This document shows positions 13,619-53,657 of a stretch of DNA of 64,000 nt, one piece after another. The stretch is from Ostrea edulis (taxonomy: Eukaryota). A model generated the notes under the pieces. It worked only from the letters and a program-made list of their open reading frames with translations. It was not told the origin of the DNA and searched no databases. Numbering within the stretch: position 1 is the first letter of the stretch; each line of letters begins with the position of its first letter. The position numbers and the translations under genes were made by a program. The stretch covers positions 27,156,001-27,220,000 of the forward strand of contig NC_079170.1 in assembly GCF_947568905.1 (NCBI RefSeq), read 5' to 3'.

Positions 13619-14272
13619 ATGTAAAACTTATACGGTACCAATTTTGATGCACCAGATGCGCATTTCGATAAAATAATGTCTCTTCAGTGATGCTCATCCG
13701 AAATGTTTGAAATCCGAAATAATAATGAAGTTTTAGAGCTATTATAGCCAAAGACAGCGTACCAAAAAAAAGTGGCGTCAAATTCGTCTAAGGATAAGAG
13801 CTATGCATGAGGGAGATAATCCTTAATTTTGAAAAATGAATTTCTAAATTTTATAAGAACAATTATATATACATCTGTATTTTCAAGCTAGTAACAAAGT
13901 ACTTAGCTACTGGGCTGTAGAGACCCTCGGGGACTAACAGTCCACCAGCAGAGGCCTCGACCCAGGGGTCATAATGTAAAACTTATACGGTACCAATTTT
14001 GATGCACCAGATGCGCATATCGACAAATAATGTCTCTTCAGTGATCCTCATCCGAAATGTTTGAAATCCGAAATAACAATGAAGTTTTATAGCTATTATA
14101 GCCAAAAACAGCGTGCCAAAAAAAGTGGAATCAAATTCGTCTAAGGATAAGAGCTATGCATGAGGGAGATAATCCTTAATTTTGAAATGAATTTCTAAAT
14201 ATTATAACATTAATTAAATATACATCCGTATTTTCAAGCTAGTAACGAAGTACTTAGCTACTGGGCTGTAGA
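13619..14272 (-). mobile_element. Retrozyme-like element, ~1.8 tandem 355-bp monomers, both hammerheads mutated
   Basis: Period 355 (13621 vs 13976). Hammerhead at 13645-13696 has a weakened stem II; the one at ~14000-14050 has GAAA>GATA. Confidence 0.85.
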
Positions 14273-14809
14273 TAGTTATACTATAATTAAGAATCCCACC
14301 AACCATTTATTAGATATGTACAATCATGTTAATGTGCATGATTATGCATAACTGAATTTTGTGGCCTTCCTTAAATATTTTTGTCTGGTATTATGAAATT
14401 TTGCTGTTTGTCGTTTGGAATTACAAACATTATTGATAAAAACTGAGTCATCAATTTGATTTAAATCTGCATTATTATACATTTTATGAAGATGAGAAGC
14501 ATTTTTCTATTTCTAGGTTGTTTGTGTTACAGGGAGATAACAACAATGGAAACATGGCGGATTCGCTAACTCACTAACTCTCGTGTTATTCTATTCATAG
14601 TACAAAAACACATTCCTTCCAAAAGAAAGTATACAGTGCCTAGCACGTGTATTTTATCATATAATCCTTCATATCAAACGTAACAACATTGTTCATAGTA
14701 TTCATCATATTAGTTGTTCAAACAAACTTTTATGAAACTCAATTTTGCACTTGTCTTTTCGTGAGTTTAAATAAACTAACAGAAAATGATAGAAAAACAT
14801 TGAACTTAC

Positions 14810-14875
14810 CTACTGTGTATTAAGCCTGTGAATGAAAGATCGATTTGTCGTGGGTGCGTATGTTTTGTTTATATA
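14810..14875 (-). promoter_or_regulatory. Candidate TATA box plus short non-coding first exon of G1
   Basis: TATATAAA at 14875-14868 and a strong AG|GTAAGT donor at 14810. The G1 signal exon begins at an acceptor, so an upstream exon is required. Assignment is inference. Confidence 0.35.
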
Positions 14876-15049
14876 CAGACAGTTTTGTGTTGTCGTGTGT
14901 ATTGTTTTCATTTTAATTGCCTAAATTCCTATATAATTGACGCCAGTTACATGGAAGACTTTTTCCTTCCTATCCAGGCAGATTTCAGAGTAATAAAATA
15001 TTTTTGTAGCATTAACTTCAACCTACCAAGGATATGGAACACATATTAA

Positions 15050-17640
15050 AAACAAGAGGCTCTCAGGCCTCATCGGTCACCTGAGTATTGATTAAAAGTA
15101 TCACTAGACCAAATAGCTGTGAACTCTATGATGATTTTCCTGTTCTGCATATCTAAGGTAAATTCTAATATTCAACAGCAAAATAAAAAATATATATATT
15201 TATATATTTCTCTGAAAAACATCATTCTGATACTGTCACCATTGTAAACATCTAAGTTTTGTTTTTCATTATCAAGTTTATAGTAGGGAATAGTGTTATC
15301 AGGAAAAATGAATAAAATAAAAATAATAAATACATGCATTTTTGTCAATGCAGAAATGAATAATAAGGAGTAAAAATGCATATGTTTATCAATAAATTTA
15401 TTTAAAATAAATATTTAAACGAATAAATAATAAATGCGAATAAATAATTAAATAGAAAAATACGCAGAAATACACAGAAAGTCAGTGAAATATACAAGTA
15501 TATATTCATGATAATTATTATGTCTATGAAATATCCCTGCATATTTTATGTGAAATCTTATGAGAGTAAATCTTGCACACGCACATCTGTACCTTTTTTT
15601 TCAAAAAGTAGATATTGTCACTTTACACAATCTAAAATCACAATTATACCAAAAGATCAAATCATGTTTGATTTCTTTAACTAGATGTAAAACTAAAACT
15701 ACTTGTATATATATACTTATATCAATTGTTGCTGGTTTTTCTCTATCTTTTTTTTTTGGAGGGAGACAGTCTTATCTTATATATCTGATGGTCAATTTCC
15801 TGGATTTGATTTCATTGCATATATAATATACAATAGGTTTGAGTACAAGTTCAGACAACTTAAGAGGTCCTCACTTTCTTTCTATGAGCTTTTTGTGATA
15901 CGTCTTGCAATACCCCCATGATTTTGAATTCTAATGTGATTAACTCGAAAGGTATTATAGAACATCTGAAACCATGAATAGACCATTATGAGGATTGTAA
16001 CCTGATGGTCAAAATTTGCTAAAATTTACAATAAATCTATGATTAAAGAGGGCATCATTTTTAAAGTCTAGTAAGGATAGCTTTACCAAATTGTGTAAAA
16101 TTCTTGAAAAGCAAAAATAAATAAATGTTAAATAGACACTAATAAAAAATACCACGTTGTGTTCACAAAACTTTCAAAATATTAAATATTTCGGTGATGG
16201 GATATAGCCATCTATATTTACCTTAAAACATATTTTTGCCTAGGCTTCGATTTCCCTTCCTAAATTTAGGGAGCTCGTTCATCCATCAAAAATACATTGA
16301 GTCAATATTCATAATTTTATTCTTACATTTTTCAGTTGTCAGTTGAGTGTTCATTTTTTATTCGCTTTCCGTTATTCAAATACATGCAATGTTACTATTA
16401 GTTATTTTCAAATGCAACATTAGTTATATGGGTAAATTTACACCCTCCACTTTTTTTTTATAAAAGTAATGAATAGTAAGAATGTAAGCTTGAACTGGTG
16501 GATTGAAACCATGGCGTGAAAGTGGAAAGCTACCACTCCTCCTCCAATCTAACACTCCCAGTCTCATGCTTAACTATCTTCGAAGAAACACTGGACCAAT
16601 TGCAATCAATTTTTTTTTCACAAATCATCATTGAGCAAAGGACATTTATGTTTGTTCAATTCCGCTACCCATGAGGTAGGGTGGGGCCACAATTACAATG
16701 CACATACAGCTCTTACAGTGCTGTATTAAAAGAAACCTGTAGTTTGCTATTATACCGATGTCCTTTCTACGTATTTAATTATTCATAAAGGTTGTTTTAA
16801 ATTCTTTTATATGTTATTTGGGTAATCATATCATTACATTGGGCGTTATATATTAATAATAATAATTATGCATTTTAATTGTAATACTATGAATATTTTA
16901 TTCACATGTATGTACACATCGATTTCATATTATCTCTTCTTTCACATTTGTAAAGCGCTTTAGAGAACTAATGCTGATAGGGCGCTATATAAATCTTTTA
17001 ATTACAGAGTTTTATATGGGAATATACATGAAATGAAATTCTTCTCTAGAGTAACAGGGCCACACTAAAAGAAATCCCAATGCAAATGTTCCCATGTTGT
17101 GTGGATAAAAGAAAATTAAGCTCCCGCGACAATGGTCAGAGCATATGATATTGTCCTGCCTGTAAGTATGTCTCAACATTTAACTGTGATATTGCTCATA
17201 ACTTTTGAATAGTGATTGATAGAGCTGTCATAATTCATATCCACATTCCTTAAAGCTTGTGACAAGACCTTATTTTTGCGCCAAAGCGTTTAACCTTTTG
17301 ATCTTGGCCTTAAATAGTTCAGGAGTTTAACTTACTTTTAAGAAAACGTAACCTATCTTACCTCATGAACTATATAAGGTAGTGCTTTCACAATTTGTAT
17401 ATAAATTACCTTTAGTAGAGCTTTAAATTTCATGCACGATATTTAACCTTGTGAACTTGACCTTGGAGTATGACCTTGGAGTATGATTTTTAAAGTTTCT
17501 AACCTTGTGACCCTAACCTTGGAGTTTGAACCACTCTTAAGAAAACCTAACCTGTCAAATATGTCATGAACCTTAATAACACACTATGTATATATAAATT
17601 CTATATGGTAAAGCCGTTTATTTATTATTATGATGTTTGA
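15050..17640. mobile_element. Cluster of Helentron/HINE-like fragments
   Basis: AACAAGAGGC..CATCGGTCACCTGAG end motif at 15051 and TGACCTTG-rich core repeats at ~16480-16730 and ~17030-17640, resembling bivalve non-autonomous Helentrons. Borders uncertain. Confidence 0.5.
16949..17003 (+). mobile_element. L2/CR1-type LINE 3' tail
   Basis: TGTAAAGCGCTTTAGAG..GGCGCTATATAAAT, the conserved L2-type 3' stem-loop. Confidence 0.6.
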
Positions 17641-17644
17641 CCTT

Positions 17645-17850: not shown

Positions 17851-17924
17851 ACCCAGAAATAGTTTCTCAAATCTGTACGAATTGATTTAATTATAAAAGA
17901 CATGATGATATAAAATAAGCATAT

Positions 17925-18390: not shown

Positions 18391-19208
18391 TAAAAGTTAC
18401 GGAAGCGTATTACTGCCAATTGATATAGTTTTTTGCTATGTCTTACGTACGAGATACTAAGTCATACGTACGAGATAATATGTCGTACGCACGAGATAAT
18501 AAGTCGTTATCACGAGATAACATTTCGTACGTACGAGATAATAAGTCGTTTTAACGAGATAATAAGTTGTAATTTCGAGATAATAAGTCGTACGAACAAA
18601 ATAACAAGTCATAATAATGACATACTAACTCGTACGGAGGAGAAACACTTAGTTCTACGAACGACATAATAAGTCGTTATAACAAGATACTAAGTTGTAA
18701 TAACACTATAACATCTCGTAATAACGAGATACTTAATCATACAAACGAGATAATAAGTCGTATGGACGAGATAATAAGTCGTACGTACGACATAATAAGT
18801 CGTAGTAACGATATGATAAATCATTATAACGAGATAATAAGTCATACAAACGACATACACTAAGTCGTACGTACGAGATAATAAGTGGTTTGAACGATAT
18901 AATAATATGTAGGACGTACAATAGATTTCTAGCCACGAAGATGACCTTTAAGTTATAGATCTCGTAAAGGTATGTGCTTCTAGTATTAGAGCCGAGTTTG
19001 TGTCCTTACAAGTACTCAATAGTTCCCTTTAGTTGCAAGAATATTATGTTTCCTCAGCCGATTATGTTGTGGGGTTTTTTTTTTAAGATAGTTCCGTGTT
19101 ACAATTTATATCACGTGGTCAACACTTGAAAACTGACCAGCAACAACAAAGTCGATCAAATCTATTTTGTAAATGTAGTCCGAGGCAAATTGACCTACTA
19201 GTAAACAT

Positions 19209-19269
<61 letters not shown>

Positions 19270-20129
19270 GTAATGTATGGGATTAATTTTGATAATTGTA
19301 TATTGTTGATTAGTTCTATGTTATAAGTTATTAATTAATTTTATAAGGATTATCACTATATCTATTCTGCACAAAATTAGGAGTGTTTATAGCGTTATAC
19401 ACAATACGCAAAAAGAATGCATATATGTTATTAATTTATTTGTTCCACTTAAACATTTCATTCTTGTGGTACTTAGCCGTTATTGATGTGATAGTATGAA
19501 TTTCTATATGTATTTATTGTTTTTAGATGTGATGTTTCTGTAATCTGAGGACAGATTAACAATTTTCATGGGGAGAATGTGATAGTATTAATATGAATTT
19601 CTATATGTATTTATTCGTTTTGATATTTTTCATTTATCGTTTTGCTAAATACAATCATAAAATTCAATTTACCGTAAGTTCAATTGCGCATGTGGAATGA
19701 GTTGTCTGAGTAAAGTTTTATTCTGTTATTTCATTGGTTCTTTGATTTCATTGGTCATTTCATATTTCTTTAACCAATAATAGTATTTTAGTACATGTAT
19801 AAATCTACCGCGCTTACCTATGTAGTTAGAGCAGTAATACGTTTTGAAGAGTTACAACCAGCTGATATCTTCCGCATCTTATGGTATGTTATTTCTATAT
19901 TTAAGTATATGTTTCATTTCCATATAAAAAGCTGATATACGTAATTATTTTGATTGCAAGTTATTTACTTTATTGTGATTTTGCTTTCAAAGTCGTAATG
20001 ATTATATGAGTCTGTAAGATCTTAATCTAAATTGTTTACAAAACATATGTACATATTTGTATAAAGTATAGCATGCTTCTAAAATGTTTACTTTGGGTAA
20101 AATTTACAATTGTCATATTTCACTTATGT

Positions 20130-20360
20130 AAAACTCCTACGGTACCAATTTTGATGCACCAGATGCGCATTTCGACAAATAATGTCTCTTCAGTGATGCT
20201 CAACCGAAATGTTTGAAATCCGAAATAACAATGAAGTTTTAGAGCTAATTATAGCGAAAAACAGCGGCCCAAAATGTGGAGTCAAATTTGTCTAAGGATA
20301 AGAGCTATGCATGAGGGAGAAAATCCTTAATTTTGAAATGAATTTTTAAATTTTATAACA
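20130..20360 (-). mobile_element. Retrozyme-like element, 5'-truncated, with 8-bp TSD
   Basis: ACTTATGT at 20122-20129 and 20361-20368; empty site in unit A at ~3177. Confidence 0.88.
20152..20202 (-). ncRNA. Type I hammerhead ribozyme, intact core
   Basis: Minus strand GCAUCA-CUGAAGA-GACA UUAUU UGUC-GAAA-UGCGCA-UC/UGGUGC: stem I 6 bp, stem II 4 bp, palindromic stem III AUGCGCAU, AUC cleavage triplet. Confidence 0.85.
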
Positions 20361-21133
20361 ACTTATGTTTTTCTTTCTTGATTTGTAATATTATTTATCC
20401 GTTATTGTAGGTCAATGCCTTTATTTTCTACTGAATAAATTAATGAAACCAACATCTGCCTTCCTCCTCGGTTACACTGATGTACAAATTGAAACATTGT
20501 AGATTCGATGGATCTTCTTGTTGAGTTGCTGAGCAAACGCAGTGTACATAAAAGCCAATTAAACAAATCATGCGAAGATAAGGTATTGACATATTTCATT
20601 CTTTTTCATAATTACTTGCTATTTAAGGCCGTCCGTGCTCATATTTAACTACTGTTTCTGTATGGCTGGGTGTCATTTTCATTTGCCTGTAATTAAACAT
20701 TATGACGCTAAATGTGTTACGATTTATCAAATTGAAAACATAGGCTTTGAACAAACTTCATGCAAGATAACACTTATTTTAATTTATGAATAAAATGCGA
20801 TATATTACATTTATACTCAATATTTCACATTGTATTTTGTAGCTTATGTTTGTAAATACTTCTTGGGGTCTATTTTCAGTACATCGATAATAAAATCGCG
20901 TATTAATTGTACATATAGCAAAATAAAATGGTTGATACATGTAGGTGCTCTACACATGGACCGGTTGATAGGCGCTCAACACATTCTATACCTCTGTTCT
21001 GTTGTTTATTCTTTAAGATGCTTAGAATAGAAATATTTTATGTTCGGATGAGTGTAACGAAGGAGAACATAAATATAGTGTCTATTTATAGTCTGTATGA
21101 TACCAACCTATATTCACCAGTTTATACATACTC

Positions 21134-21859
21134 TCGCTGTGACCTTCAATTCGACTTATAGATATATCGATGACGTTTTGTCTATTAACAATGATAGCTT
21201 TCATTCATATGTCGATTTGATATATCCCTGTGAGCTCGAAATAAAGGACACCACAGAGTCGTCCACTTCTGCTTCATACTTAGATATTTTATTGAAAGTA
21301 GACATTAACGGCAAACTAACAACTCAACTGTATGACAAATGGGATGATTTCAGCTTCTCCATCGTCAACTTCCCACATTTATGTAGCAATATTCCATTAT
21401 CACCTGCATATGGTGTTTATATATCTCAACTGATTCGATATGCAAGAGCTGGTTCTGGGTATAGTCAGTTTTTAAATTGAGGCAATCTACTGACAAACAA
21501 GTTGATGGTACAGGGATTTCAACAGTCTCGATTGAAGTCAGCATTTCGCAAATTCTATGGTCGTTATAACGATCTAGTTCGTCCATACAACCTTTACATT
21601 CGGTCAAATGCTGTCTGACGTGTTTCATACCGATTGTTAAGCCGTTCTTGGCATACCGATTTTGACTACGGATAACTCCGTTTACCTGATCAGGATATGG
21701 GGCTCACGGCGGGTGTGACCGGTCAACAGGGGATGCTTACTCCTCTTAGGCACCTGATCCCACATCTGGTGTGTCCAGGGGTCCGTGTTTGCCCAACTAT
21801 CTATTTTGTATTGCTTGTAGGAGTTATGAGATTGATCACTATTCGTTATCTTCACCTTG
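21134..21859 (+). mobile_element. Young 5'-truncated Penelope-like (Naiad-type) retroelement with 7-bp TSD
   Basis: RT motif YRYIDDVLSINN..EIKDTTES..YLD..LYDKWDDFSFSIVNFP..SPAYGVYISQLIRYAR, one premature stop. CATACTC at 21127-21133 and 21860-21866; absent in unit A. Confidence 0.88.
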
Positions 21860-22945
21860 CATACTCGTATCCTTTGCATAAAGCGAAATTGAAGAATGTT
21901 TTTGTCTACAAATTCACAGGTAAAACTGCCTTCATCCCGAAGTGTTTGAAAGGTATTCATCCAATATTGGCTACAATGCTTTCGGAAAAATTCCCACCAT
22001 GATTCATTCCTCTAATTATGGTTGTTAGATCCACTGTTAGAAGTATAAACTTCCAACCATATGAATGTTCTTGAGAACCCATCTATACAACCGTTTAAAG
22101 GCAAAATACATATGGCTTCAATCTATCATAAGAGTTTACGTGTCATACAAAATCTGGTCCACTGCATAAGTATTTTCGCCTATGCAGTCTGTTTCGCTGT
22201 CTTGTTTTAACGTCCCCGGGAGCAATCACTTGAAGCAACAAACGAACACTCTCCTGATTAACAACAAAACCTTTCTTGATACACAACAGATGTAAAAGTT
22301 TGTATCCATTTTTTGCCAAAAGACGTCTCAAGCTTCTAATACTAATAACAATCCCATTATAAAAAAAAAAAAAACAAGCGACTGCTAAATTTCTTTGTGT
22401 TTAAATACTAACTTGAAATAAAACTTTACAAGCACGTCAGCTGTTTATACGCTGTCCATACTTGTTTGGTGAAATTATGTAATCCATGCGGTTTAATTAT
22501 ATGTCGTAATAACGAATTATGATCTCGTTATTACGGCTTTGTATCTCGTTTGTTCGACTTATTGTCTAGCTATTTCGACTTATTATATCGTACCTACAAC
22601 TTAGTATCTCGTTATTACGACTTATTATGCCATTCGTACGACTAATTATCTAGTCCCTACGACTTATTATGTCTTTCGTATGATTTAATATCTCGTTATT
22701 ACGACTTAGTATCTCGTACGTACGACATATTATCTCATGATAACGACTTATCTCATTCGTACAACTTATTATGTCGTTATTATGACTTAATATATCGTTA
22801 CTACTACTCGTTATGTCTTTTGTCCGACTTATTATCTGGTAAATACAACTTACTATCTTGTTATCACGACTTATTATATTGTAAGTACAACTTAGTATAA
22901 CATTATTACGTTCGTACGACTTATTATCTCATTGTTATGACTTAA

Positions 22946-23587: not shown

Positions 23588-24459
23588 TTACGATGAAGTT
23601 CATGTGACTTATTATGTCATCCGAACGACTTATTATCTCGTTCGTATGATTTAGTATCTCGTTATTACGACTTAATACCTCGTTATTACGGCTTATCATA
23701 TCGTACTTAGTATCTTGTTATAACGACTTAGTATGTCATTCATACGACTTATTATCTCACTATCACGACTTATTATATTGTATGTACAACTTAGTATGAC
23801 ATTATTACGACTTATGATGTCTTTCGTACGACTTATTATCTCGTTTATACGACTTACGATATCGTTCGTACAACTTATTATCTCGTCCGTACGACTTATT
23901 ATCTCGTTAATACGACTTATGATATCGTTCGTACGACTTATTATATCGTCCGTGCGACTTATTATCTCGTTCGTATGATTTAGTATCTCGTTATTACGAC
24001 TTAGTATCTTGTTATTACGACATACCTCTTTAATACAACTTATTATCTCGTAATAACGACTTATTATGTCGTTCGTATGATTTACTATCTCGTACGAACG
24101 ACATTTTATCTCGTAATAACAACTTATTATCTCATACGTTATCTACGGAAACGCATAACTTCCTCGTGTTGTTGTGTTATACCTCAAAATGGCAAATTAA
24201 ATTAGTGTCATTTTCCAATGAAATGTTTATAACGTCATAATTATGTCGAATTGTACAAGGAGATCAGAAAAAATCGATATACTTTGGATGATTTTACCGC
24301 CCTCTTCCAGCTTTATTGACTTTAATCACGTCATGATAACTTTTTGTGTAATAATATTTGCTGCAATAAAAAATGCGTAGAAATATTCTCGCAATTCTGT
24401 ACAAGAAGAATCAATCATATCGATATGATACCGTTTTTCAGGTTTTACTTTCAAAATCA

Positions 24460-24667
24460 CACGGCCTTTCACCTCTGGTCGGCGCGGGTTCGAATCCTGC
24501 TCGCGTCGGTAAGTGTGAAAGTTTCCCAGTTTACTTTCGGAAGGTCGGTGGTCTCTTCCCAGATACATTTGTATCTGGGTTTTTTCTTCCATCAACAAAA
24601 ACAGGGCGCCACCCGATAACTAAAAAATTGTTGAGTGTGGCGAAAAACATCAAAACAATCAATCAAT
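24460..24667 (+). mobile_element. tRNA-derived SINE, duplicated copy
   Basis: Paralogue of 6651-6857; GGTTCGAATCC. Confidence 0.75.
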
Positions 24668-26399
24668 AAAATGAGAATGAAAGAAATGGGGAAGGGTATA
24701 AAATCTTAATTTCACTACATTTCGGGTAATGTTTGCAAAGAAGCCACATCGCTTCAAATTCCTCGTAAACCGAGTGTTTCAACACTCATACCCACGGTTA
24801 GATACACAATTACGCAACCATGGATCCACACTATATATAACAACAAAAAAGGCCTACAAAATATCGAAGAATACATTTACTACTGAAACATACATCTTTC
24901 AACGAATAAAACGATACACAACATGAATGTGTTAAAACAAACACGAAAAGATTCAACGAGATATTTTTTTTTTTTGAAACGACATCCTTAATTCATCAAA
25001 ATTCATTGAAGACAAATTGTCATTATGTTCAATTATATTATTTCAAGCAACAAAATAGGATTCAATCAAACGAAATATATCTATAAAACTAATTCAGTGT
25101 ATATGTATTTGCCATGGAAAATTCGCTTTTCATCGGATAAAAGGATGTTATCATACATGCATTTCAACGCCTAATACCATTTTACAAATTGCAGTTGCAT
25201 TATTTTATCTTATCATGACTTGACGCACACTGAAGAGCAATAAGATAATGATATAGGATAGTTAGGTTTCAGAATTAGTTTTAGATTTATTTTAATCATT
25301 GATGCATTCATCAGAAACTGTATTATAAGAGACGGGTTTTATCTTAAAATCGATGCAATTATTCATTTTAATTAATTTCGAAATCCAATGAAAGCTACGT
25401 AAAAGAAAGACATACATTTGGCATGTTTGATCCCTGACTAGAAAACTACCCTAAACCATAATCAAGAAAGCCAGAACCCTCACGGTCTAGATATCGTCGA
25501 CATGCCATCTAATATTTTGTTAACACTACTTTCAAATTAATTTCTAATAAAAAGATGTTTATACTAATTGACTTCTTAAACTTCTGATTGCCGATCACTC
25601 AATTCCAGCACATGCAACTCAAAAAAGTCACTTACAATAGGAAACCTATATCACACTGCCCCGATCTTTGAAGCAAATCATTTTTTATTATACGGATATA
25701 ATTTGTTCTGAAACACTGCTAAAAGTTTAATTTAAAAACATTAAAGATTTAACTTCTACTCGTACTTTTCTATGGAAGTAACTGTCATTAGAGGCAAGAT
25801 CTGCTATCAACTCTTTAAAGACAAGTGCATGTAGTTGATCCGCAGCAGTAAAACGAAGTCTACTATGAAAAACTGCGACGGTGTAATGCGGAAAGGATAA
25901 ACATTCCGTCGCTGGGACGCAGTAAATAAGGGATCCGCGTTGGCTGAACTGTAGGTTCCTGACCCTACCTCTGGTGTGTCGAGGAGTACTCGTTTGCACT
26001 TTTCTTAATTTTCTATTCTTTATAGAATTTTAGATTCATCATTGTTCGTTATCTTCATTTGTTCAGAGAAAACAATGTAAAGAATGAAAACCTTGAAAGA
26101 TGTTGCTTTCACAAATTTCGCTATAAAAACCAGTACAATAGTTTTTCATGTAATATCAAATTTCATGGAATAAGATTTTTTCTCCCAGATACACTATTAC
26201 AATCATACAGAAGATGTTTTGTGTCGTCATTTACCGTACATGATCCGCATGATAGAGATATATTTTTGTGTCGATTACTTACACGTACCTTATTTTACCT
26301 TACCATTCTCTCGATGAATTAAAGACTTTTCTTTTTGGCATTATAGACATATGCTTCTTCAATAAAAATACGATAACATTCATGTCTTGTGATTAGTTA

Positions 26400-28469: not shown

Positions 28470-28730
28470 ATTTAGTTTGCCAATACAACCTATTATTATG
28501 TCAAATTCTGTCTGACGTGTTTCACACCGATTGTTAGATCGTTCTTGGCACACTGATTTTACCGACAGATAACTCCGTTTACCTGATCAAGATCTAGGGT
28601 TCATGGCGGGTGTGGCCGGTCGACAGGGGATGCTTACTCCTACATGTGTCCAGGGGACAGTGTTTACCAACTCTATTTTGTATTGCTTATAGGAGTAATG
28701 AGATTTACCATTGTTCGTAATCTTCACTTT
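28470..28730 (+). mobile_element. Penelope-like 3'-end fragment
   Basis: Paralogue of 10865-11100. Confidence 0.75.
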
Positions 28731-29129
28731 TCATCTAATGTCTAGTACAAGTATTTCAATTATTAGTCATATTAGTTACCTTCCGTGTACCAAAGTTATA
28801 TTTATGTCGTTATTCAAATAGTATGCTCTTTTTGTTCAAATTTATATCTTATGCTAGTCACTTATTAATTAATTGAAGACTTTCTGCTTTCTCTCTTCAT
28901 TTCAAATTAGTGTGTGACAAAATACTCAAAACGACAAATCATTCTAGCATAACAAGACAAATGTGACCATGTACATTTTACCCGATGTCAAGTACCGTTA
29001 GCAGATATTAGTAATATAACTTTTGATTATATTTACTCACAAAAGGGTAATTCTGAAATACATTGATTGAAATACAATATTCCAGTAATTTACATGAGAT
29101 CATGATCAATTTCTTTATCATTTGAAATC

Positions 29130-34733: not shown

Positions 34734-35129
34734 AATGTAAAACTTATACGGTACCAATTTTGATGCACCAGATGCGCATTTCGACAAATAATGTCTCTTC
34801 AGTGATGCTCAACCGAAATCTTTGAAATCCGAAATAACTATGAAGTTTTAGAGCTAAATATAGCCAAAAACAGCGTGCCAAACAAGTGGAGCCAAATTCG
34901 TCCAAGGATAAGAGCTATGCATGAGGGAGATAATCCTTAATTTTGAAATGAATTTCTAAATTTTATAACAGCAATTAAATATACATCCGTATTTTCAAGC
35001 TAGTAACGAAGTACTTAGCTACTGGGCTGTAGAGACCCTCGGGGACTAACAGTCCACCAACAGAGGCCTCGACCCAGGGGTCATAATGTAAAACTTATAC
35101 GGTACCAATTTTGATGCACCAGATGCGCA
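34734..35129 (-). mobile_element. Retrozyme-like element, 1.1 monomers (period 351)
   Basis: Full monomer plus a repeat of its end, stopping 8 nt past the cleavage junction. Confidence 0.88.
34761..34811 (-). ncRNA. Type I hammerhead ribozyme, intact core
   Basis: Same sequence as 20152-20202. Confidence 0.85.
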
Positions 35130-35165
35130 AGTATAAGATGTATTGTGTACAATATTCACTTAAAG

Positions 35166-35505
35166 AAAGGTGAAGATAACGAACACAGATCAATTTAATA
35201 ACTCCTATAAGCAACACAAAATAGATAGTTGGGCAAACACGGACCCCTGGACACACCAGAGGTGTCTAGGAGGAGTAAGCATCCCCTGTCGACCGGTCAC
35301 AACCGCCGTGAGCTCTATATCTTGATCATATAAACGGAGTTATCCGTAGTCAAAATCAGGGTTTCAAGAATGGCCTAACAATCGATGTGAAACACGTCAG
35401 ACACATTTGACCCCATGATAGGTTGTATTGGCAAACTAGGTCGTTATAACGACCTAGAAATTACGAAATGTTGACTTTAAACGAGACTGTTGAAACCCAT
35501 GTACC
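35166..35505 (-). mobile_element. Penelope-like 3'-end fragment
   Basis: AAAGGTGAAGATAACGAAC..GGGCAAACACGGACCCCTGG..CGAGACTGTTGAAA, the reverse complement of the shared terminus. Confidence 0.82.
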
Positions 35506-37363: not shown

Positions 37364-37732
37364 CTAGAATTTCATTCCCAACCCCTATATTCTATTTCAA
37401 TTCATTTATGATATATCAATGTGATTGTGATTTTTTCTAGAAAAACTTTCACACTTCGCAAATATTATATCTTTCACCTGTATGAAATTTATATTTTTTT
37501 CTGGATAAAAAGAGAGATATATGATGTTTTTCTATTCAATGATTTAGCTTCATGGGGTGCACTTATTATTGCGATTCATTTCTGCTAATTTTAAGAATGG
37601 TAAATCTGAAAAAGCTAAATGATGTATTTTAATTCAAAACGAGTTAAATATAATGCTAAATGGCTTATAATCAAGCACAATGAGTTTAATTCTTTCGTAC
37701 ATTTAACATTCGCCGCAGATATAGAATACATG

Positions 37733-38258
37733 AAAGGCGAAGATAACGAACAGTGATCAATCTCATAGCCCCTATAAGCAATACAAAATAGAGAGCGTGG
37801 CAAACATTGACCCCTGGACACACCAGGGGTGGGATCAGGTGCCTAAGAGGAGTAAACATCCCCTGTCAACCGGTAACACCCACCGTGAGCCCTTATCCTG
37901 ATCAGGTAAACAGAGTTATCCATAGTCAAAATCAGTGTGCTAAGAACGGCCTAACAATCGGTATAAAACACGTCAGACAGCATTTGACCCAATGATAGGT
38001 TGTATTGACGAACTAGATCGCTATAACGACCATAGAATTTGCGAAATGTGGACTTCAATCGAGACTGTGGAAGCCCCATGTACCATCAACTTGGTTTGTC
38101 AGTAGCTTGCCTCGATTTAAAAACTGACTATACGCTAAAGAAGCTCTTGCGTATCGAATCAATAGAGAGTTATAAACACCATATACAGGTGATAGTTGAA
38201 TACTGCTACATATATATGGGAAGTTGACGATGGAGAAGCTTAAATCATCGCGTTTGTC
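37733..38258 (-). mobile_element. 5'-truncated Penelope-like insertion with 7-bp TSD
   Basis: ATACATG at 37726-37732 and 38259-38265; empty site at ~54682. Translates YDKRDDLSFSIVNFPYICSSIQLSPVYGVY. Confidence 0.88.
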
Positions 38259-47825: not shown

Positions 47826-50800
47826 CACTCAAAGTCAATAAAAGCGTGCAATCGATGTCGCCGGCACTTTATTAGAAAATAAGCTATATCAAATCATATA
47901 TTTTGTGTGCTATACATTCATGGACCCATAGCCTCCCTAGGCATGGTATACTTTCTATTTCCCCTTTACTTATAAACTTGGTAGGAAGCATAGATACCCT
48001 AAATTTGTAACATACGTGACTGTCGCCGACTCAATTTTTAAAAGGGAACAAGGAAATATAAAAATCTGAGAGCGTGTTTTTTAATTTTCTTTGCGTTTAT
48101 ATCATTTGTATTTCCTAAATTTTCATTCAATAAAAGTTTAACACCTTTTGCGTATGATTTTAAGCAGTAGTGTATATATTACTCCATGTCGCCAGATTAT
48201 ATTATGTGATCATAGGGTCAATTAAACACCCAATATATGAACAAAGATTTCGTATTGTCTTTATGTTTTTGATCTATTTTGGCGCTAAAATATTCAAAAA
48301 CTTTGGGAAAATATTCGTCAAGCGATATTTGGATGTGGCATTGAGAAGAAGTCATCATTATTCTCAAAATTTTGCATTCTGATTTTAGAAATGTAACATA
48401 CGATACAATACTTTTTTTTATGAAAACGTATTTGCAGAGCAAATGTTACCCCTTTTATGAAAATCTCGTAGTGTACAGAGAATGAAAATATAAACATTTC
48501 TTTTGCAGAAGTCATCGGTTGGTCTGAAATTTGACAAACGTGTCAAGATGTAACATTCGTGATGTAACATTCGTTACCGAGAAATTAATTAAAAGGAATG
48601 ATATCACATTTTCCGGCGTATTTTTGCTCTCTGTCTGCATGATGTGGTATACGACATGAATGTCTACCATGAACATTTGAGTTTGAAAGTCAATACGTGT
48701 TAAACTTTGAGAATTAGGATTAATTTTCTCTTACGGTAAGTACTGTTACAACAACTGCAATGTTTGATATACAATATTGATTAAGCAGATGGAATGTTTT
48801 GGTCTGAATTTGTTCTTCTGATATCAAAGAATATATATCGTATTCCAAATATCTCGAAATCCCTCTGGTGTAAGAATTACATTGAGTAGAACGCTGGTAA
48901 CATACGTTTTTCAAAGTAACGTATGCTACTTAATGAAATGCTTGATTAGACATCAAATATTGAACTACATATTGACAAAATATCATCATTAACGATATGT
49001 TTGTTGAATATCAACTATGTTATGAAGAAACAAATGTGTTATTGTTCCCGTATTCACCAGCATATACAGATATCCTCTGCAAGAAATACAGACCATGTTT
49101 TTTCTCTTCTACTGTCCTATTTATGATACATGTAACTATGCAACTCTACATTTATCAATTTGCTAGAATTCAGCATCTTTTCATAATATACCTTAGAAAT
49201 GAAGGGATTAATCTCTGATGATTGTTCTGTGCAATCTTATAGAGAAATCATTAAAAAATATTTTATCTGAGTGTAACGTATGTTACCAGGAATTCCGTTA
49301 CGTAATATTATTCTACTTGTTCTTAATTTTTTATTTATTTTTTTCAGAAATGGCGCTTGTGAGAGCAGAAGTACAGAATAACTACCATGAAAAAAAAATG
49401 CATTAAAGCATAAGAACAACCATGAAAAAATGTTTTAGAAATAATATTATATGCTCCCCTTGTGGCAATACTGAAAAGGTAGAATGTCTGTATTGACAGT
49501 GAAAATAAAGGTTTAACTACCGGTCAAAGGCTACCATAATGATACATGTAAGTTTTGTATCTCAAAATACTTATAAGCAACTGGTCATTTGAGTAATTTT
49601 GTATGACCTTTGACCTTGTGACTTGAAATCCAATGGGGGGTCATCTATTCATAAGGGGGCACCAGTGTTTCAAGTTTGATGTTTATCAAGGAAAGACTTC
49701 TCAACGGACAATAGCGTATGTCCAGAGTAGTTTAACCGTTGTCCTTTTGACCTCAAAATCAATAGGGGACATCTATGTCTTAAGGTTCACGTTTAATATT
49801 CATTCATAACACCGCGTGGTGGATTATACTGACAGTTTCTATGGAAAGGTATTCCAAAATAAGCAACGAAAACATAAGATTCGGTATACATTTAATCAAA
49901 ATGTTGGGAAATTAAACATTTTCTTTATATTATTATTGTAGACAGATTGTTAGAAATGGGTAAATATGTTTCTTTCCATTTTTTGAATGGAAATGATGTG
50001 TTTACAGTAATGAAAGGAAAAATAAGAAACATACGTTACTTTCATTGTAGCAATCCAGGTTTCAAAACATGTGTCTGTTTTTTCTATAAGAATCATGAGC
50101 ATTTGAATAGCAAAACATCAATCTTTTACTTTTGTTTTAATAGCATATTTATTGCAAATTAACAAATTCAGAAGAAAAGACACATTTGGTATTTTTTTTT
50201 GCTTGTCTACGTTATATTTCTATTAAAATTGGTATTTCCATTGAATTAAGTGATGTCGTTATGATTTTGCAACATCAATCGTAAAGAATAACTGATGATG
50301 ACATCGTTTTGGCATAATATTTTCATGGATGTACTGTTGTGTAAGTGTTGAAACATACGTTACATAATTATAGCGCTACTTCATTTACATACATAAAAGC
50401 TATCGTTCTATATCTATTGCTAGTCTTTTGTTTTCATGTTTCATACATATTGAACTGTTCGAGAATATTTGTTAATCAATTTTATTTTCTGCCATTTCAA
50501 AGATATTGAAAGTGATATCTAGTCGTTTATTTTGCGCTCTTAAAATCTTATTGCTGACTTTTACAGCAGATAATTTCTTGTTGTGTTGATTAAATATTTT
50601 CTTTGAAAACCTGTATTTATTGTCTTTCGCAAATTAGAAAAATATATGCTCAGTCAATTCCAATACAAGTTATGGAATAATACATGGAAAATTAATGTTT
50701 ATCTTACATATTATCATGTCAAGGACTCGGTAACGATGGTTACATGTGAGAAAAATCTCGAAAAATATACCATACTTTGACCTACTGTAAAAAAAAATCT

Positions 50801-50943
50801 GTAATACTTAACTTGAAACAATTTGAGGTGAGTGTTCAACAGATATTTACCATTAATAAAGGCATGTTACCATATATATTTTGAATGGTCGATAAACCAT
50901 GATTTTGAAACCCTCAATTGCACGCTTTTATTGACTTTGGGTG
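47826..50943. mobile_element. Nested ~3.1-kb TIR element without a recognisable ORF
   Basis: CACTCAAAGTCAATAAAAGCGTGCAATCGA (47826) is inverted to TCAATTGCACGCTTTTATTGACTTTGGGTG (50914-50943). Confidence 0.62.
49590..49790. mobile_element. Helentron/HINE-like core repeat fragment
   Basis: TGACCTTTGACCTTGTGAC..AAAATCAATAGGGGACATCT. Confidence 0.55.
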
Positions 50944-51744
50944 TATGTTAGTTACTAATGATTTATTTACTTAATAGTTACATAAAGTGCTTCATTATTT
51001 GTTTTAGTGCATACGGTACACAGTTTTGTATATTTATTTGTAGGGATCATATGTATGTACAATGTAAGAACAGGCAAATACACTGAACACGTACATTAAA
51101 TTTTAGTGCTTTAAAATGCATGTAAATGTTAACATTATCATAATTTATTTACTAATGCAAATGGTCAAATCCAATGATAGAATGTGTTTAATTCACTATG
51201 CATCAATAAAGTAGGCACATATTGGTTACTTATGTAAAGATAGAAAATATGCGATTCAATTATCTGGACGCTTCATTTATCCGGACGATTTTGCTGGGAA
51301 CCAAAGTGTCCGGGTTAACGAGGCTCCACTGTACTCTGAAGTACCATCACAAAAACACAATTTGGAGATTGTCTTTCCTACTTCTAGATGCTTAAATTTT
51401 ATTCCATGTCAGTTTAATTTCCATATTGAACCAGAGGGATAACATTTTTCTTATCTAACCTTGGCAGTCTTTTAATAATATATGAACCATATAACATGGC
51501 TCTGAGAGCTTATTTTAGAGAAAATTCGGATATATTTTCACTATCTGTAATGTAATGTTGTCATCCTGTCTTGAAACCCTACGAGAGCCAGTTTTGCAGA
51601 ATACTTAAAGCGTACCATTCTGCATTGTTTTAATCATCAGATGAGCGTTTCTAGTCTCATGGATCTCTTGTTTTTCAATCAATGAATCAAAACATAAATA
51701 GATGCAGTTTGTGTTTAATAAAGATTAACACTGCACAAATAGAT

Positions 51745-52249
51745 TTATAGTTCGTTAATTAGAAACCCAGAAAATACATTATAAGAGCCGTGGTCATGAA
51801 ATTTAGCTTTTTGGCCGTTCCTGTTCTGGATCCAGATTTTATCCCCCTTGTTTAACAGCAGTTGCAGAGTCTGGCCAGCATGTGGATGAGTTTTGGCAGT
51901 AGAAAACAGGACAGACATCTTTTTGCCATTTTTAACAATATTGACGTGGACATAATTACTTGGATGACTCATCAAGCTACATGAGATGCTGTAGAGACCG
52001 TTATAGGGGGCGGTGAAAACACCAGTTGTTGGTTGATAGGCTCCGCCCCTATTTGTCAAAACTCGGTCATACTTTACCAAAGCGTGAGCGCTCACTGTTG
52101 TGTCTTTAGATAAAAGGGCTGTAAAGGCAACTTTCCTTCCTCTCTGTGGTAAAACAAAAATAAAACATATGAATGTACGAACTTCATTTGGGTAGATTGT
52201 TCATGTTCACAACCATAGTGGATAATAGCAATCTGACTAAAATACAGAC

Positions 52250-52287
<38 letters not shown>

Positions 52288-53657
52288 TAGATATATAGTA
52301 TAGGTCTGTACTTCAGTCAGATTGGGGACAATAGTTCTCGAGAGGTAGCAATTTCCAATGATTCCATCAAATACACGCAGCATTCATATGATAATACTGA
52401 CTATAATCAGACCTGAACAAAAAAGGCGAAATTAATTACCTAAACATTTCTTACATATCATCTTTTGTATTAAAGTTGGTATCCAATTGATAAGGGTATA
52501 AATTTACCTTTCCAACAGTCTCAGATGAAGGGTATACCAACATCAATTTTACGCTAGTGACAACACCTAGCTAACATTGTGTTACTATATAAACATTGTA
52601 TTCTTTTGAGAAGTGCTTAACACAGTGGTTACCAATTAATAAGCATATCTGTATATCTCGATTTATATTCCATGAATAACAATTAGTTGTATAAATAGTA
52701 TTTTGGGGTTTTTTTTATCCCACAATGTATTGACAATGCCTTACTTAAGGACGGTAATGGTGATGTAAAGCTTGTACGGTACCAATTTGGATGCACCAGA
52801 TGCGCATTTCGACAAATAATGTCTCTTCAGTGATGCTCAACCGAAATCTTTGAAAACCGAAATAACAATGAAGTTTTAGAGCTAAATGTAGCCAAAAACA
52901 GCGTGCCAAAAAAGTGGAGTCAAATTCGTCTAAGGATAAGAGCTATGCATGAGGAATATAATCCTTAATTTTGAAATGAATTTCTAAATTTTATAACAGC
53001 AATTAAATATACATCCGTACTTTCAAGCTAGTAACGAAGTACTTAGCTACTGGGCTGTAGAGACCCTCGGGGACTAACAGTCCACCAGCAGAGGCCTCGA
53101 CCCAGGGGTCATAATGTAAAGCTTGTACGGTACCAATTTGGATGCACCAGATGCGCATTTCGACAAATAATGTCTCTTCAGTGATGTTCAACCGAAATGT
53201 TTGAAAACCGAAATAACAATGAAGTAATGAATTACTTTTTAAAGAAAACGACGATTGGTAAAAGTAATTTAATGCCCAAAATAATTACGATAATTGTAAT
53301 AATATATATAATATCCATTTTTTTTTCTTTTGAGATATTTTCCATTAATTTGTTTCTTTTTGTAATGACAATGCATTACTTAAGTTAAGTAATAATGGTA
53401 TTGTAATGCCTTACTTTTTAAAGAAAAAGACGAATGACAAATGTAATTTAGTGCCCAAAATAATTCGATAGTTGAAATGAAATACACTACTTCAAAATAT
53501 TATTCCCATCAAGTCTCTTCCATACATTACAAATTTAATATATTTCTTTCTTTTGAGATATTTGCCATTAATTTGTTTTTCTTCATCATATCAGTGTAAT
53601 TGTACTTACGTCACCAGAAATGAGTCCAACTACAGCACAAAAAAGTATATATTTCAT
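51745..53657 (-). CDS. Secreted C1q-domain protein (C1qDC copy G5), 2 coding exons, 148 aa
   Basis: Exon 53657-53610 MKYILFCAVVGLISGD with a phase-0 GAC|GTAAGT donor; exon 52143-51745 after TTTTACCACAG gives RGRKVAFTALLSK..NVFSGFLINEL. Open frame. Confidence 0.9.
52230..52323. repeat. 25-bp inverted repeat enclosing a (TA)n tract
   Basis: AATCTGACTAAAATACAGACCTATA and TATAGGTCTGTACTTCAGTCAGATT, 2 mismatches. Confidence 0.9.
52790..52839 (-). ncRNA. Type I hammerhead ribozyme, intact
   Basis: GCAUCA-CUGAAGA-GACAUUAUUUGUC-GAAA-UGCGCA-UC/UGGUGC. Confidence 0.85.
53141..53190 (-). ncRNA. Type I hammerhead ribozyme, core intact, one distal stem I mismatch
   Basis: ACAUCA-CUGAAGA-GACAUUAUUUGUC-GAAA-UGCGCA-UC/UGGUGC. 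Confidence 0.82.

What the first reader, a model, noticed from the sequence alone, without database searches (positions are those of the whole stretch)
13619..53224. Hammerhead-ribozyme retrozyme family: four insertions, six ribozyme copies
A ~351-355 bp non-coding repeat (13619, 20130, 34734, 52763) contains on the minus strand a full type I hammerhead: stem I GCAUCA/UGGUGC, CUGAAGA, stem II GACA/UGUC, GAAA, a palindromic stem III AUGCGCAU too short to fold alone, and an AUC cleavage site. Established: small type I hammerheads with palindromic stem III occur with Penelope-like elements and in metazoan non-LTR retrozymes, act as dimers and yield circular RNAs. Inference: this is an oyster retrozyme, probably abundant. 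Whether this family is already described needs a search.
Basis: partly seen in the sequence, partly recalled or inferred. Interest (0 to 1): 0.85.

Follow-up and report, generated by a model that had tools for sequence, protein, structure and literature searches.

The report
Oyster hammerhead retrozyme, homologue of mussel's
The window carries four insertions of a 351-base non-coding mobile repeat with a self-cleaving hammerhead ribozyme; it is a young, roughly 10,000-copy oyster relative of the mussel "retrozyme" already shown to make circular RNAs, so it is a new member of a known kind.

Summary
Four minus-strand insertions of a 351-nt repeat carry six complete type I hammerheads and one 3' fragment. 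Three are identical and intact, two carry a stem mismatch, and one has a dead core (GAAA to GAUA).

Rfam Hammerhead_1 matches the intact copies at 31.2 bits. That is just under its gathering score of 34, which is why the whole-window scan was blank.

The genome is 894.8 Mb with 10 chromosomes, the published span of Ostrea edulis. It holds 10,086 core-intact hammerhead copies, the best of them 98-99% identical.

All insertions end at one fixed 3' base, 36 nt past the cleavage site. Their 5' ends vary, and most span 1.x units (up to about 5). An empty paralogous site proves insertion.

The unit is homologous along its length to the cloned Mytilus galloprovincialis retrozyme. The two hammerheads differ by four fully compensatory pairs and by no core base.

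Resident Penelope-like elements carry minimal hammerheads with the same "ribozyme, short tail, 3' end" layout.

Self-cleavage and circular RNA were not shown here, because the RNA data were contigs only.

Verdict: a new member of a known kind, of moderate interest. First-stage notes flag the same family elsewhere in this genome.

The parts
13619..14272 (-). Insertion 1: 1.85 units. The 5' end lies at unit position 53 and the 3' end at unit position 351. It is an older copy, about 93% identical to the young copies.
13649..13693 (-). Hammerhead copy with an intact core, a C.A mismatch in stem II and one extra loop base.
   Evidence: no Rfam hit at E<=10
14004..14047 (-). Hammerhead copy with a dead core (GAAA>GAUA) and a stem I mismatch.
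20126..20362 (-). Insertion 2: a 5'-truncated copy of 0.68 unit (from unit position 116), flanked by ACATAAGT on both sides.
20156..20199 (-). Intact hammerhead, identical to the copy at 34765-34808.
   Evidence: the Rfam filter missed it
3176..3183 (-). Empty paralogous target site (ACATAAGT) for insertion 2. The joined flanks of insertion 2 match window 2980-3374 in one piece at 94.75% identity.
34735..35129 (-). Insertion 3: one full unit plus a 44-nt upstream partial (unit 308-351). It is a young copy, with genome copies 98-99% identical to it.
34765..34808 (-). Intact type I hammerhead. Cleavage is predicted after C at 34771, that is between window positions 34771 and 34770.
   Evidence: Rfam RF00163 at 31.2 bits, E 1.4e-6
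35086..35129 (-). 5' partial unit holding only the last 8 nt of the ribozyme upstream of the cleavage site, the stem I 3' strand and the 36-nt tail.
52763..53225 (-). Insertion 4: 1.3 units with two hammerheads 351 nt apart. It lies 0.6-1.1 kb upstream of a C1q-domain exon on the same strand.
52793..52836 (-). Intact hammerhead.
   Evidence: Rfam RF00163 at 31.2 bits
53144..53187 (-). Hammerhead with an A.C mismatch at the outer pair of stem I.
   Evidence: Rfam RF00163 at 26.0 bits
35011..35085 (-). GC-rich hairpin domain of the unit (unit 1-75). It is the block best conserved with the mussel retrozyme. The same domain lies at 13899-13973 and 53039-53113.

Best explanation
This is a young, high-copy, non-autonomous non-LTR retrozyme of a flat oyster, most likely Ostrea edulis. 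It is homologous to the Mytilus galloprovincialis retrozyme.

Proposed life cycle, with shown and inferred steps marked:
1. Genomic copies are transcribed. RNA-library contigs contain the repeat (shown), but which transcript type they come from is not known.
2. Two ribozyme copies pair through the 8-nt palindrome AUGCGCAU into a double hammerhead and cut after C315. The two copies may sit in one multimeric transcript or on two RNAs. This step is inferred from the fold and from the mussel and axolotl experiments.
3. The 351-nt monomer, with 5'-OH and 2',3'-cyclic phosphate ends, is closed into a circle by the host RtcB ligase. This is inferred from the literature.
4. The reverse transcriptase and GIY-YIG nuclease of a Penelope-like element copy the RNA at a nicked target. 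The genomic footprint is shown: cDNA always starts at unit position 351 (...UUUUACAU), 36 nt 3' of the cleavage site, and 2-8 nt of target microhomology overlap that end.
5. Synthesis runs round the circle or along a multimer for 0.7 to more than 5 units and stops at variable 5' points. There is an excess of 5' ends near the cleavage site.
For: Ribozyme identity:
- The canonical core and three helices were read directly.
- Rfam Hammerhead_1 aligns full length at 31.2 bits, E about 1e-6.
- The predicted lowest-energy dimer is the double hammerhead at -35.3 kcal/mol. Two monomers give 2 x -13.2, and the monomer's best fold is not a hammerhead.

Homology to a validated retrozyme:
- The supplement of PMC7229834 prints the cloned mussel repeat.
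- Two of its blocks (25 and 24 nt) hit only the retrozyme copies in the window, with 2-3 mismatches and 0 hits expected by chance.
- The two 44-nt ribozymes share 32 of 44 bases. Eight of the 12 differences form four compensatory pairs in stems I, II and III. One is G-C to G-U, one is the free position N7, two are in loop II, and none touches the core.

Mobility:
- There are 10,086 core-intact copies on both strands against 0 for the control. The 30 best copies are 98-99% identical.
- All of about 33 independent insertions end at unit position 351 and have variable 5' ends.
- An empty paralogous site exists for insertion 2.
- Flank duplications exceed shuffled controls: 37% versus 6% score 6 or more, and they often overlap the terminal ACAT.
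- Eight of 33 5' ends fall in unit positions 308-324 (P = 1.4e-4).

Constraint:
- Subfamily-level variants lie almost only in unit 121-269. Only 1 of 14-16 lies in the GC domain, ribozyme or tail (P about 1e-4).
- The free core position N7 varies about twice as often (250) as the invariant adenines A6, A9 and A14 (146, 123, 111).

Likely partners:
- There are at least 1,102 GIY-YIG candidates.
- RT plus GIY-YIG open frames of 787 and 973 aa were found.
- At least five families of minimal type I hammerheads with a palindromic stem III were found next to these GIY-YIG loci.
- In one abundant family the ribozyme is followed by a 46-nt tail and then the 3' end or the next tandem unit.

General features:
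- No open frame exceeds 56 codons and GC is 39%.
Against: - No cleavage, no RNA ends and no circle were observed. The only RNA data were assembled contigs. Several of these run on into unrelated sequence or poly(A), so host read-through transcripts could explain them.
- The monomer circle folds no better than shuffled sequence (z = -0.33).
- The Rfam score is below the gathering threshold.
- No Penelope-like element shares sequence with the unit, so the partner is unresolved.
- The genome-wide count of 5' ends exactly at position 316 was 32, against 6-7 at two control positions. A third control gave 48 because of loop indels, and one-base deletions can mimic the signal.
- Within the family, private mutations hit the ribozyme about as often as the rest of the unit (0.017 versus 0.022 per site). 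This is expected for neutral decay after insertion and gives no evidence of selection.
Confidence: 0.85

Rival explanations
1. The repeats are not a separate non-autonomous element. They are solo pseudo-LTRs or 5'-truncated 3' ends of an autonomous Penelope-like element whose coding part was not sampled.
For: The architecture (hammerhead, short tail, 3' end, partial tandems, an occasional inverted pair as in L021) is the same as that of the resident Penelope-like elements. A 2026 preprint relates Xenopus retrozymes to such pseudo-LTRs.
Against: - In every insertion longer than one unit, position 351 joins straight to position 1 of the same 351-nt unit, for up to about 5 units.
- None of 30 loci with 1.5-kb flanks has an adjacent RT or nuclease frame.
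- tblastn of two resident element proteins against the window finds nothing.
- There is no similarity to the 3' regions of the two sampled families.
Confidence: 0.06
2. It is a satellite or segmentally duplicated tandem repeat that happens to contain a decaying hammerhead and spreads by DNA-level processes only.
For: Short arrays exist, for example 5.4 units on C2. Some copies sit in local duplications, such as the identical GAUA variants near the window and the cluster on C8.
Against: - About 10,000 copies are dispersed on all ten chromosomes and both strands.
- A fixed 3' end with variable 5' truncation, flank duplications and a clean empty site all point to retrotransposition.
- Compensatory evolution against the mussel copy shows the ribozyme fold is maintained.
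Confidence: 0.03
3. Some copies have been co-opted as sense-strand intronic ribozymes that modulate C1q-domain immune genes. An example is the pair in insertion 4.
For: Insertion 4 carries two near-intact ribozymes on the same strand as a C1q exon that begins at a splice acceptor 0.6 kb downstream. All four window copies share the strand of the three C1q exons.
Against: - The upstream exon was not located, so intronic status is only probable.
- Four of four copies on one strand is not significant, and the genome-wide strand count is even (5,077 versus 5,009).
- The copies are ordinary family members with different 5' ends, so they are independent insertions.
Confidence: 0.04

Closest known systems
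Mytilus galloprovincialis non-LTR retrozyme (genomic clone and the Mg353 monomer; Cervera and de la Pena 2020, PMC7229834)
   Same: - Similar unit size (351 versus about 353 nt) and the same order of parts.
- The same type I hammerhead with a palindromic stem III (AUGCGCAU versus ACGCGCGU).
- A GC-rich hairpin domain with near-identical blocks (23/25 and 21/24 bases).
- A shared CCUCAUGCAUAG block.
- Thousands of copies: about 5,000 in the mussel and about 10,000 here.
   Different: - About a third of positions differ, by a by-eye estimate.
- Stems I, II and III differ by compensatory pairs.
- The spacer between the ribozyme and the GC domain is about 10 nt shorter here.
- The oyster stem III is richer in A-U.
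- The mussel RNA was shown to self-cleave (about 0.1 per min), to accumulate as circles and to be ligated by RtcB. None of this has been tested for the oyster family.
- That paper calls retrozyme sequences species-specific and does not report a mussel-oyster relationship.
Amphibian retrozymes (newt satellite 2, axolotl Rtz331 and Rtz353)
   Same: Type I hammerheads with a short helix III that work much better as dimers, in tandem units of about 330-350 nt, giving linear and circular RNAs.
   Different: There is no sequence relationship. Copy numbers are more than 100,000 and arrays are long, whereas here most copies are dispersed insertions of 1.x units.
Hammerheads in the pseudo-LTRs of Penelope-like elements (Cervera and de la Pena 2014; Craig et al. 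2021, PMC8557442)
   Same: - Minimal type I ribozymes with a palindromic stem III lying near the 3' end.
- A 30-40-bp 'tail'.
- Partial tandem or inverted insertions.
- A preference for microsatellite or (TA)n targets in some copies.
- Resident families in this genome show all of these features.
   Different: The retrozyme encodes nothing and is only 351 nt long. Its stem III palindrome is 8 nt rather than 4-6 nt. It has no sequence similarity to the sampled elements.
Plant LTR retrozymes
   Same: Non-autonomous retroelements whose hammerheads excise a monomer that is circularised by a tRNA ligase.
   Different: They have type III ribozymes, LTRs, a primer-binding site and polypurine tract, 4-bp duplications, GC above 55%, a length of 600-1,000 nt, and are mobilised by Gypsy elements.

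Membership tests
Hammerhead ribozyme, type I | Conserved core: C3 U4 G5 A6 N7 G8 A9, G12 A13 A14, the A15.1-U16.1 pair, and H17 at the cleavage site. | tested here: met
   CUGAAGA ... GAAA ... U C^ was read in 5 of 6 window copies and in 10,086 genome copies.
Hammerhead ribozyme, type I | Three helices with helix I open-ended, supported by covariation. | tested here: met
   - Stem I has 6 bp, extendable by 4 bp past one bulged A.
- Stem II has 4 bp.
- Stem III is 2 bp as a monomer and 8 bp as a dimer.
- Four compensatory pairs separate it from the mussel homologue with no broken pair.
- Independent hammerheads with the same stem III and different paired stems occur in environmental contigs: 4 with 6/6 and 4/4 pairs against about 0.007 expected by chance.
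Hammerhead ribozyme, type I | Score against the curated model Rfam RF00163. | tested here: inconclusive
   Full-length alignment at 31.2 bits, E about 1e-6 on 100-500-nt stretches. This is below the gathering score of 34 and absent from the whole-window gathering scan.
Hammerhead ribozyme, type I | Site-specific self-cleavage. | not testable with these tools
   Only energy predictions are available. The mussel homologue cleaves in vitro (PMC7229834).
Metazoan non-LTR retrozyme (Cervera and de la Pena 2020) | A type I hammerhead inside a non-coding repeat of 150-450 bp with low GC, occurring as monomers up to multimers. | tested here: met
   The unit is 351 nt with 39% GC. The longest open frame in a tandem trimer is 56 codons. 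Insertions span 0.7 to about 5.4 units.
Metazoan non-LTR retrozyme (Cervera and de la Pena 2020) | Signs of retrotransposition: dispersed copies and target-site duplications, with no LTR, primer-binding site or polypurine tract. | tested here: met
   There is an empty site and a 4-8-nt duplication for insertion 2. Duplications exceed shuffled controls. The 3' end is fixed and the 5' ends are truncated.
Metazoan non-LTR retrozyme (Cervera and de la Pena 2020) | [quoted passage not shown] | tested here: inconclusive
   Pieces of the repeat occur in four mollusc RNA-seq runs and in several marine metatranscriptome studies. These are contigs only, so they give no ends, strand or circularity, and some are chimeric.
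Metazoan non-LTR retrozyme (Cervera and de la Pena 2020) | Co-occurrence with autonomous Penelope-like elements. | tested here: met
   There are at least 1,102 GIY-YIG candidates. RT plus GIY-YIG frames of 787 and 973 aa were found. At least five element-linked hammerhead families were found.
Metazoan non-LTR retrozyme (Cervera and de la Pena 2020) | Sequence homology to a characterised member. | tested here: met
   Blocks from the mussel clone hit only the retrozyme copies. The ribozymes share 32 of 44 bases with compensatory changes. Full-length similarity was judged by eye, not computed.
Penelope-like element (autonomous) or its pseudo-LTR | Physical continuity with an RT plus GIY-YIG open reading frame. 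| tested here: not met
   No coding sequence adjoins any of about 35 insertions. tblastn of two resident element proteins against the window is blank.

The most novel reading that the evidence does not exclude
The retrozyme lineage is ancient and shared by mussels and oysters. These orders separated in the early Palaeozoic (my own knowledge), so the alternative is that the element moved between them.

What is conserved is more than the ribozyme. It is a module of ribozyme, 36-nt tail and a GC-rich hairpin domain. By eye, that domain shows three compensatory pairs against the mussel copy.

On this reading the module recruits and positions a telomerase-related Penelope reverse transcriptase. cDNA synthesis would then begin at one internal base, with ...UUUUACAU serving as an alignment region that pairs with the nicked target.

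That would explain the unexplained 30-40-bp 'tail' of Penelope-like elements as the stretch between the ribozyme cut and the priming site.
Probability: 0.3. Interest if true: 0.6.

Novelty: new member of a known kind. Interest (0 to 1): 0.4.

Why it matters
Retrozymes are the main source of ribozyme-made circular RNAs in animals, and only a few families have been characterised.

- This family is young, with copies 98-99% identical, so it may still be active.
- It is abundant, with about 10,000 ribozymes making up roughly 0.4% of the genome.
- It sits in an aquaculture species that has a chromosome-level assembly.
- It has a clear homologue in the mussel. That gives a rare comparative handle on which parts of a retrozyme besides the ribozyme are under constraint.
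- Its very regular insertion footprint (one fixed start base, microhomology at the target, partial extra units) constrains models of how Penelope-type reverse transcriptases prime.

For genome annotation, it also shows that Rfam at gathering thresholds misses this whole class of ribozymes.

Tried and rejected
- Rfam gathering scan of the whole window: blank. Only permissive scans of short stretches found Hammerhead_1. One intact copy was lost by the filters, and the two mutated copies gave no hit.
- My first regex search timed out.
- The single metagenome scan used too loose a pattern. Of 120 contigs, mostly chance hits, five held real hammerheads. Three of these look like telomere-associated elements of other organisms, and none is related to this unit.
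The census therefore rests on about 33 insertions plus pattern counts.
- Read laying returned contigs only, with no RNA ends, strand or circular junction that could not also come from tandem DNA.
- The 'triple-mismatch' pattern counts for exact 5' ends are confounded by small indels. I treat them as suggestive only.
- Search for the autonomous partner by similarity: none found.
- Circular monomer fold: not unusually stable. The GC domain alone gave z = -1.3.
- A pol III or tRNA-derived SINE was considered, because there is a box-B-like GGGTCGAGGCC. I rejected it because ARAGORN finds nothing and the unit has internal T5-T6 runs.
- A computed full-length alignment with the mussel clone was left out. 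That sequence exists only as text in a supplement and has no reference, so the comparison is by eye plus two short block tests and the 44-nt ribozyme.
- A majority-rule profile of the repeat was printed once, for numbering only. After that a natural copy (window 34735-35085) was the reference.
Full report
**Observation.** A blastn search of one unit against the window finds four insertions, all on the minus strand. They are 13619-14272 (1.85 units), 20126-20362 (0.68 unit), 34735-35129 (1.12 units) and 52763-53225 (1.3 units).

It consists of GCAUCA, CUGAAGA, GACA-UUAUU-UGUC, GAAA, UGCGCA, UC^ and UGGUGC.
- Three copies are identical and intact: 20156-20199, 34765-34808 and 52793-52836.
- 53144-53187 has an A.C mismatch at the outer pair of stem I.
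- 13649-13693 has a C.A mismatch in stem II.
- 14004-14047 has the core change GAAA>GAUA and a stem I mismatch.
- 35086-35129 holds only the 3' end of the ribozyme plus the tail.

The Rfam gathering scan of the window was blank. On short stretches, however, RF00163 (Hammerhead_1) aligns end to end at 31.2, 31.2 and 26.0 bits against a gathering score of 34, with E = 1e-6 to 4e-4. The consensus of that model itself has a palindromic stem III with no loop.

**Anatomy.** Thirty-four distinct full units give a 351-nt repeat. GC content is 39%, and no open frame exceeds 56 codons even in a tandem trimer.

In unit coordinates the parts are as follows:
- The ribozyme occupies positions 278-321.
- Cleavage is predicted after C315.
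- A 36-nt tail (316-351) ends in GUUUUACAU.
- Positions 1-75 form a GC-rich hairpin domain.
- Positions 121-269 are AT-rich (33% GC).

As a monomer the 61-nt ribozyme region prefers a fold that is not a hammerhead (-13.2 kcal/mol). Two copies together fold into the classical double hammerhead, with AUGCGCAU as an 8-bp intermolecular stem III, at -35.3 kcal/mol. These are predictions, not measurements. The whole unit folded as a circle is no more stable than shuffled sequence (z = -0.33).

**Genome-wide picture.** The assembly has 894,786,893 bases with ten large contigs. This equals the published span of the Ostrea edulis genome, 894.8 Mb in 10 chromosomes (PMC10979132). RNA runs that hold the repeat are labelled 'mollusc metagenome'. 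I take the host to be the European flat oyster on this size match, not on sequence identity.

The pattern CTGAAGA-N8-18-GAAATGCGCATC occurs 10,086 times, 5,077 on one strand and 5,009 on the other. The reversed control occurs 0 times. The 30 best full units are 98.6-100% identical to the copy at 34735-35085, so the family is young. The window holds five matches to this pattern against 0.7 expected from the genome average.

**Insertion footprint.** About 33 independent insertions were examined, from the window, 30 fetched loci and chance finds in other loci.
- Every one ends at unit position 351.
- The 5' end varies.
- Most span between one and two units, some two to three, and arrays reach about 5.4 units.

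This combination is the footprint of target-primed reverse transcription from a fixed start on a circular or multimeric template.

Eight of the 33 5' ends fall in unit positions 308-324, around the cleavage site at 315/316, where 1.6 are expected (P = 1.4e-4). That gives a modal 'one unit plus tail' insertion of 382-395 bp.

A genome-wide attempt to count 5' ends at single positions gave 32 at position 316, against 6 and 7 at two controls. A third control gave 48 because of indels in the AT loop, and one-base deletions can mimic the signal at 316. The excess is therefore suggestive and not established.

Insertion 2 has an empty paralogous site. Its joined flanks match window 2980-3374 in one piece at 94.75% identity. 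The empty site reads AAAAACATAAGTAAAATATG, and in the filled site ACATAAGT stands on both sides. The duplication is thus 4-8 nt and overlaps the element's terminal ACAT.

Across insertions, flank duplications scoring 6 or more occur in 37% of cases against 6% for shuffled flanks. Many start 2-7 nt inside the element's 3' end. I read this as priming by microhomology between the nicked target and ...UUUUACAU.

Because the ribozyme cuts at 315/316 and not at 351, the start at 351 must be an internal initiation site. It cannot be the ribozyme-made RNA end. This is inference.

**Homology to the mussel retrozyme.** The supplement of Cervera and de la Pena 2020 prints the cloned Mytilus galloprovincialis genomic retrozyme. 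By eye it aligns with the oyster unit along its whole length.

I could not compute the alignment because the mussel sequence has no reference. I tested it in three ways instead:
- The mussel block CTGGGTCGATGCCACTGCTGGTGGA hits only the three retrozyme copies that contain that region, with 2-3 mismatches and 0 hits expected.
- The mussel block CCGAGGGTATCACCAGCCCAGTAG does the same with 3 mismatches.
- The two 44-nt ribozymes share 32 positions.

Of the 12 ribozyme differences, eight form four fully compensatory pairs:
- stem I, A-U to G-C;
- stem II, A-U to U-A, twice;
- stem III palindrome, U-A to C-G.

One further difference is G-C to G-U, one is the free position N7, and two are in loop II. 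No core base differs and no pair is broken.

In the GC domain I also see, by eye only, three compensatory pairs. The apical hairpin changes from GGACU/AGUCC to GGAGA/UCUCC, and one G-C changes to U-A in the stem below.

The mussel element was shown experimentally to self-cleave (about 0.1 per min), to accumulate as circular RNA in gonad and mantle, and to be circularised by RtcB far better than by itself. That paper describes retrozyme sequences as species-specific and does not mention oysters.

**Constraint within the oyster genome.** Private mutations hit the ribozyme about as often as the rest of the unit, at 0.017 against 0.022 per site. This is expected for copies decaying neutrally after insertion.

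Variants shared by several copies mark propagating lineages, and these are distributed very unevenly. Of 14-16 such variants, 13-15 lie in unit 121-269 and only one lies in the GC domain, ribozyme or tail (P about 1e-4). The region boundaries were chosen after seeing the data, but they match the blocks conserved with the mussel.

In whole-genome pattern counts the free core position N7 is changed in 250 copies. The invariant adenines A6, A9 and A14 are changed in 146, 123 and 111 copies. The twofold difference is in the expected direction but modest. It is affected by sequence context and by duplicated arrays.

**RNA.** Words from the repeat occur in several kinds of RNA library:
- four very small mollusc RNA-seq runs (3-4 million letters each);
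- one marine metatranscriptome;
- several biofilm and seawater metatranscriptome studies.

Laying four of these runs gave only contig pieces. Two contigs cross the 351-to-1 unit junction, but nearly all genomic insertions contain that junction too. Several contigs run on into unrelated sequence or poly(A). The pieces with the highest word depth cover the ribozyme and tail.

A rough argument favours real RNA over DNA carry-over. Three million letters amount to 0.003x of the genome. Even a pure DNA library would therefore give only about 34x on a 10,000-copy repeat, whereas word depths reach 230. The tool warns that such depths are poor measures, so I conclude only that the repeat is present in RNA libraries. 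Circularity, strand and ends remain untested.

**Resident Penelope-like elements.** The GIY-YIG family has at least 1,102 candidates in the genome. Open frames of 787 aa and 973 aa combine RVT_1 with a C-terminal GIY-YIG domain.

A relaxed motif scan of 36 such loci finds at least five families of minimal type I hammerheads with a palindromic stem III, either GCGC or AAUU. One abundant family belongs with the 973-aa frame. Its ribozyme (UUGUC CUGAAGA ... GAAA AU UU GACAA) is followed by a 46-nt tail ending in UUUGUAUA. After the tail comes either a (TA)n flank or the start of the next tandem unit.

This is the same 3' layout as the retrozyme. It also matches the 30-40-bp 'tail' and the partial tandems described for these elements (PMC8557442).

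No sampled element shares sequence with the retrozyme, and the window has no such coding sequence. The mobilising partner is therefore inferred as a class and not identified.

**Comparison and verdict.** The element works like, and is a member of, the metazoan non-LTR retrozymes. Every defining feature that could be tested was met, and it is homologous to a characterised member. Expression as unit-length linear and circular RNA, and self-cleavage itself, remain untested.

It is not a pseudo-LTR of a coding element. Units join head to tail to themselves, and no coding sequence adjoins them.

Full-text searches found no description of this oyster family. Repbase and Dfam could not be consulted. 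The kind is well known, so I rate it a new member of a known kind, with moderate interest.

Three points go beyond the literature I could read:
- the mussel-oyster homology of the whole unit;
- the conserved non-ribozyme module;
- the single-base start site with target microhomology 36 nt past the ribozyme cut.

Earlier first-stage notes of this scan flag the same family in other windows of this genome. I did not rely on them.

Noticed in passing
window 10286-10729, 51745-52095, 63584-63934 (all minus strand): Three C1q-domain exons (Pfam PF00386, E about 1e-22) indicate a tandem C1q gene cluster. The two exons examined begin at a splice acceptor. Insertion 4, with its two ribozymes, lies 0.6-1.1 kb upstream of one exon on the same strand, so it is probably in that gene's intron in sense orientation.
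   Followed up: partly
window 2980-3374 versus 19926-20560: A segmental duplication at 94.75% identity. One copy lacks insertion 2, so the insertion is younger than the duplication.
   Followed up: yes
window 1510-1933, 4677-5057, 5885-6335, 18440-18905, 22512-22910, 23705-24133: Six arrays of about 20 copies of a 21-nt repeat (GTCGTACGAACGAGATAATAA and its complement). They are probably internal to another dispersed element, which also repeats the small ORF triplets near 6517-6899 and 24326-24669.
   Followed up: no
window 35165-35329; also 21687-21858, 28584-28732, 37732-37904, 53926-54022: Another abundant repeat of about 170 nt lies next to the 5' side of insertion 3. It also occurs in the flanks of about 20 of the 30 retrozyme loci, and on both sides of the retrozyme in L062. 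The density near retrozymes looks 2-4 times higher than in other loci. The cause could be a preferred target or simply repeat-rich regions.
   Followed up: partly
L061 (G000:C1:110501000-110510999): A tandem array with a 3,717-bp period of a Penelope-like element. It has overlapping 406-aa and 787-aa frames (RT plus GIY-YIG) and its own minimal hammerhead (AACGC CUGAGGA ... GAAA GCGC UU GCGUU) about 100 nt before the 3' end. Other copies end in (TA)n.
   Followed up: partly
G000:C8, about 65.7-74.8 Mb, plus strand (listed): About 30 copies of a diverged ribozyme variant with a dead core (GAUA) and an altered stem II. All lie on one strand and are spread over 9 Mb of one chromosome. This looks like a locally amplified, inactive subfamily or part of a larger duplicated unit.
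   Followed up: no
L021:1362-2318: Two retrozyme insertions lie tail to tail in inverted orientation with a 27-nt overlap, next to a 33-nt tail-only fragment. This is the inverted arrangement described for Penelope-like elements.
   Followed up: no
L154:about 6700-6850; L135 and L162 are similar: Environmental contigs in which a canonical type I hammerhead with the same stem III (GAAAUGCGCAUC) sits directly after (CCCTAA)n telomeric repeats. This matches endonuclease-deficient, telomere-attached Penelope-like elements of another organism. L135 also has identical 127-nt ends, which suggests a circle or tandem of 1,349 nt.
   Followed up: partly
G000:C7:27146782-27146813 (9.2 kb before the window start): A ribozyme with the same GAUA core mutation as window 14004-14047. 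This suggests that insertion 1 was copied by a local duplication of the C1q cluster.
   Followed up: no
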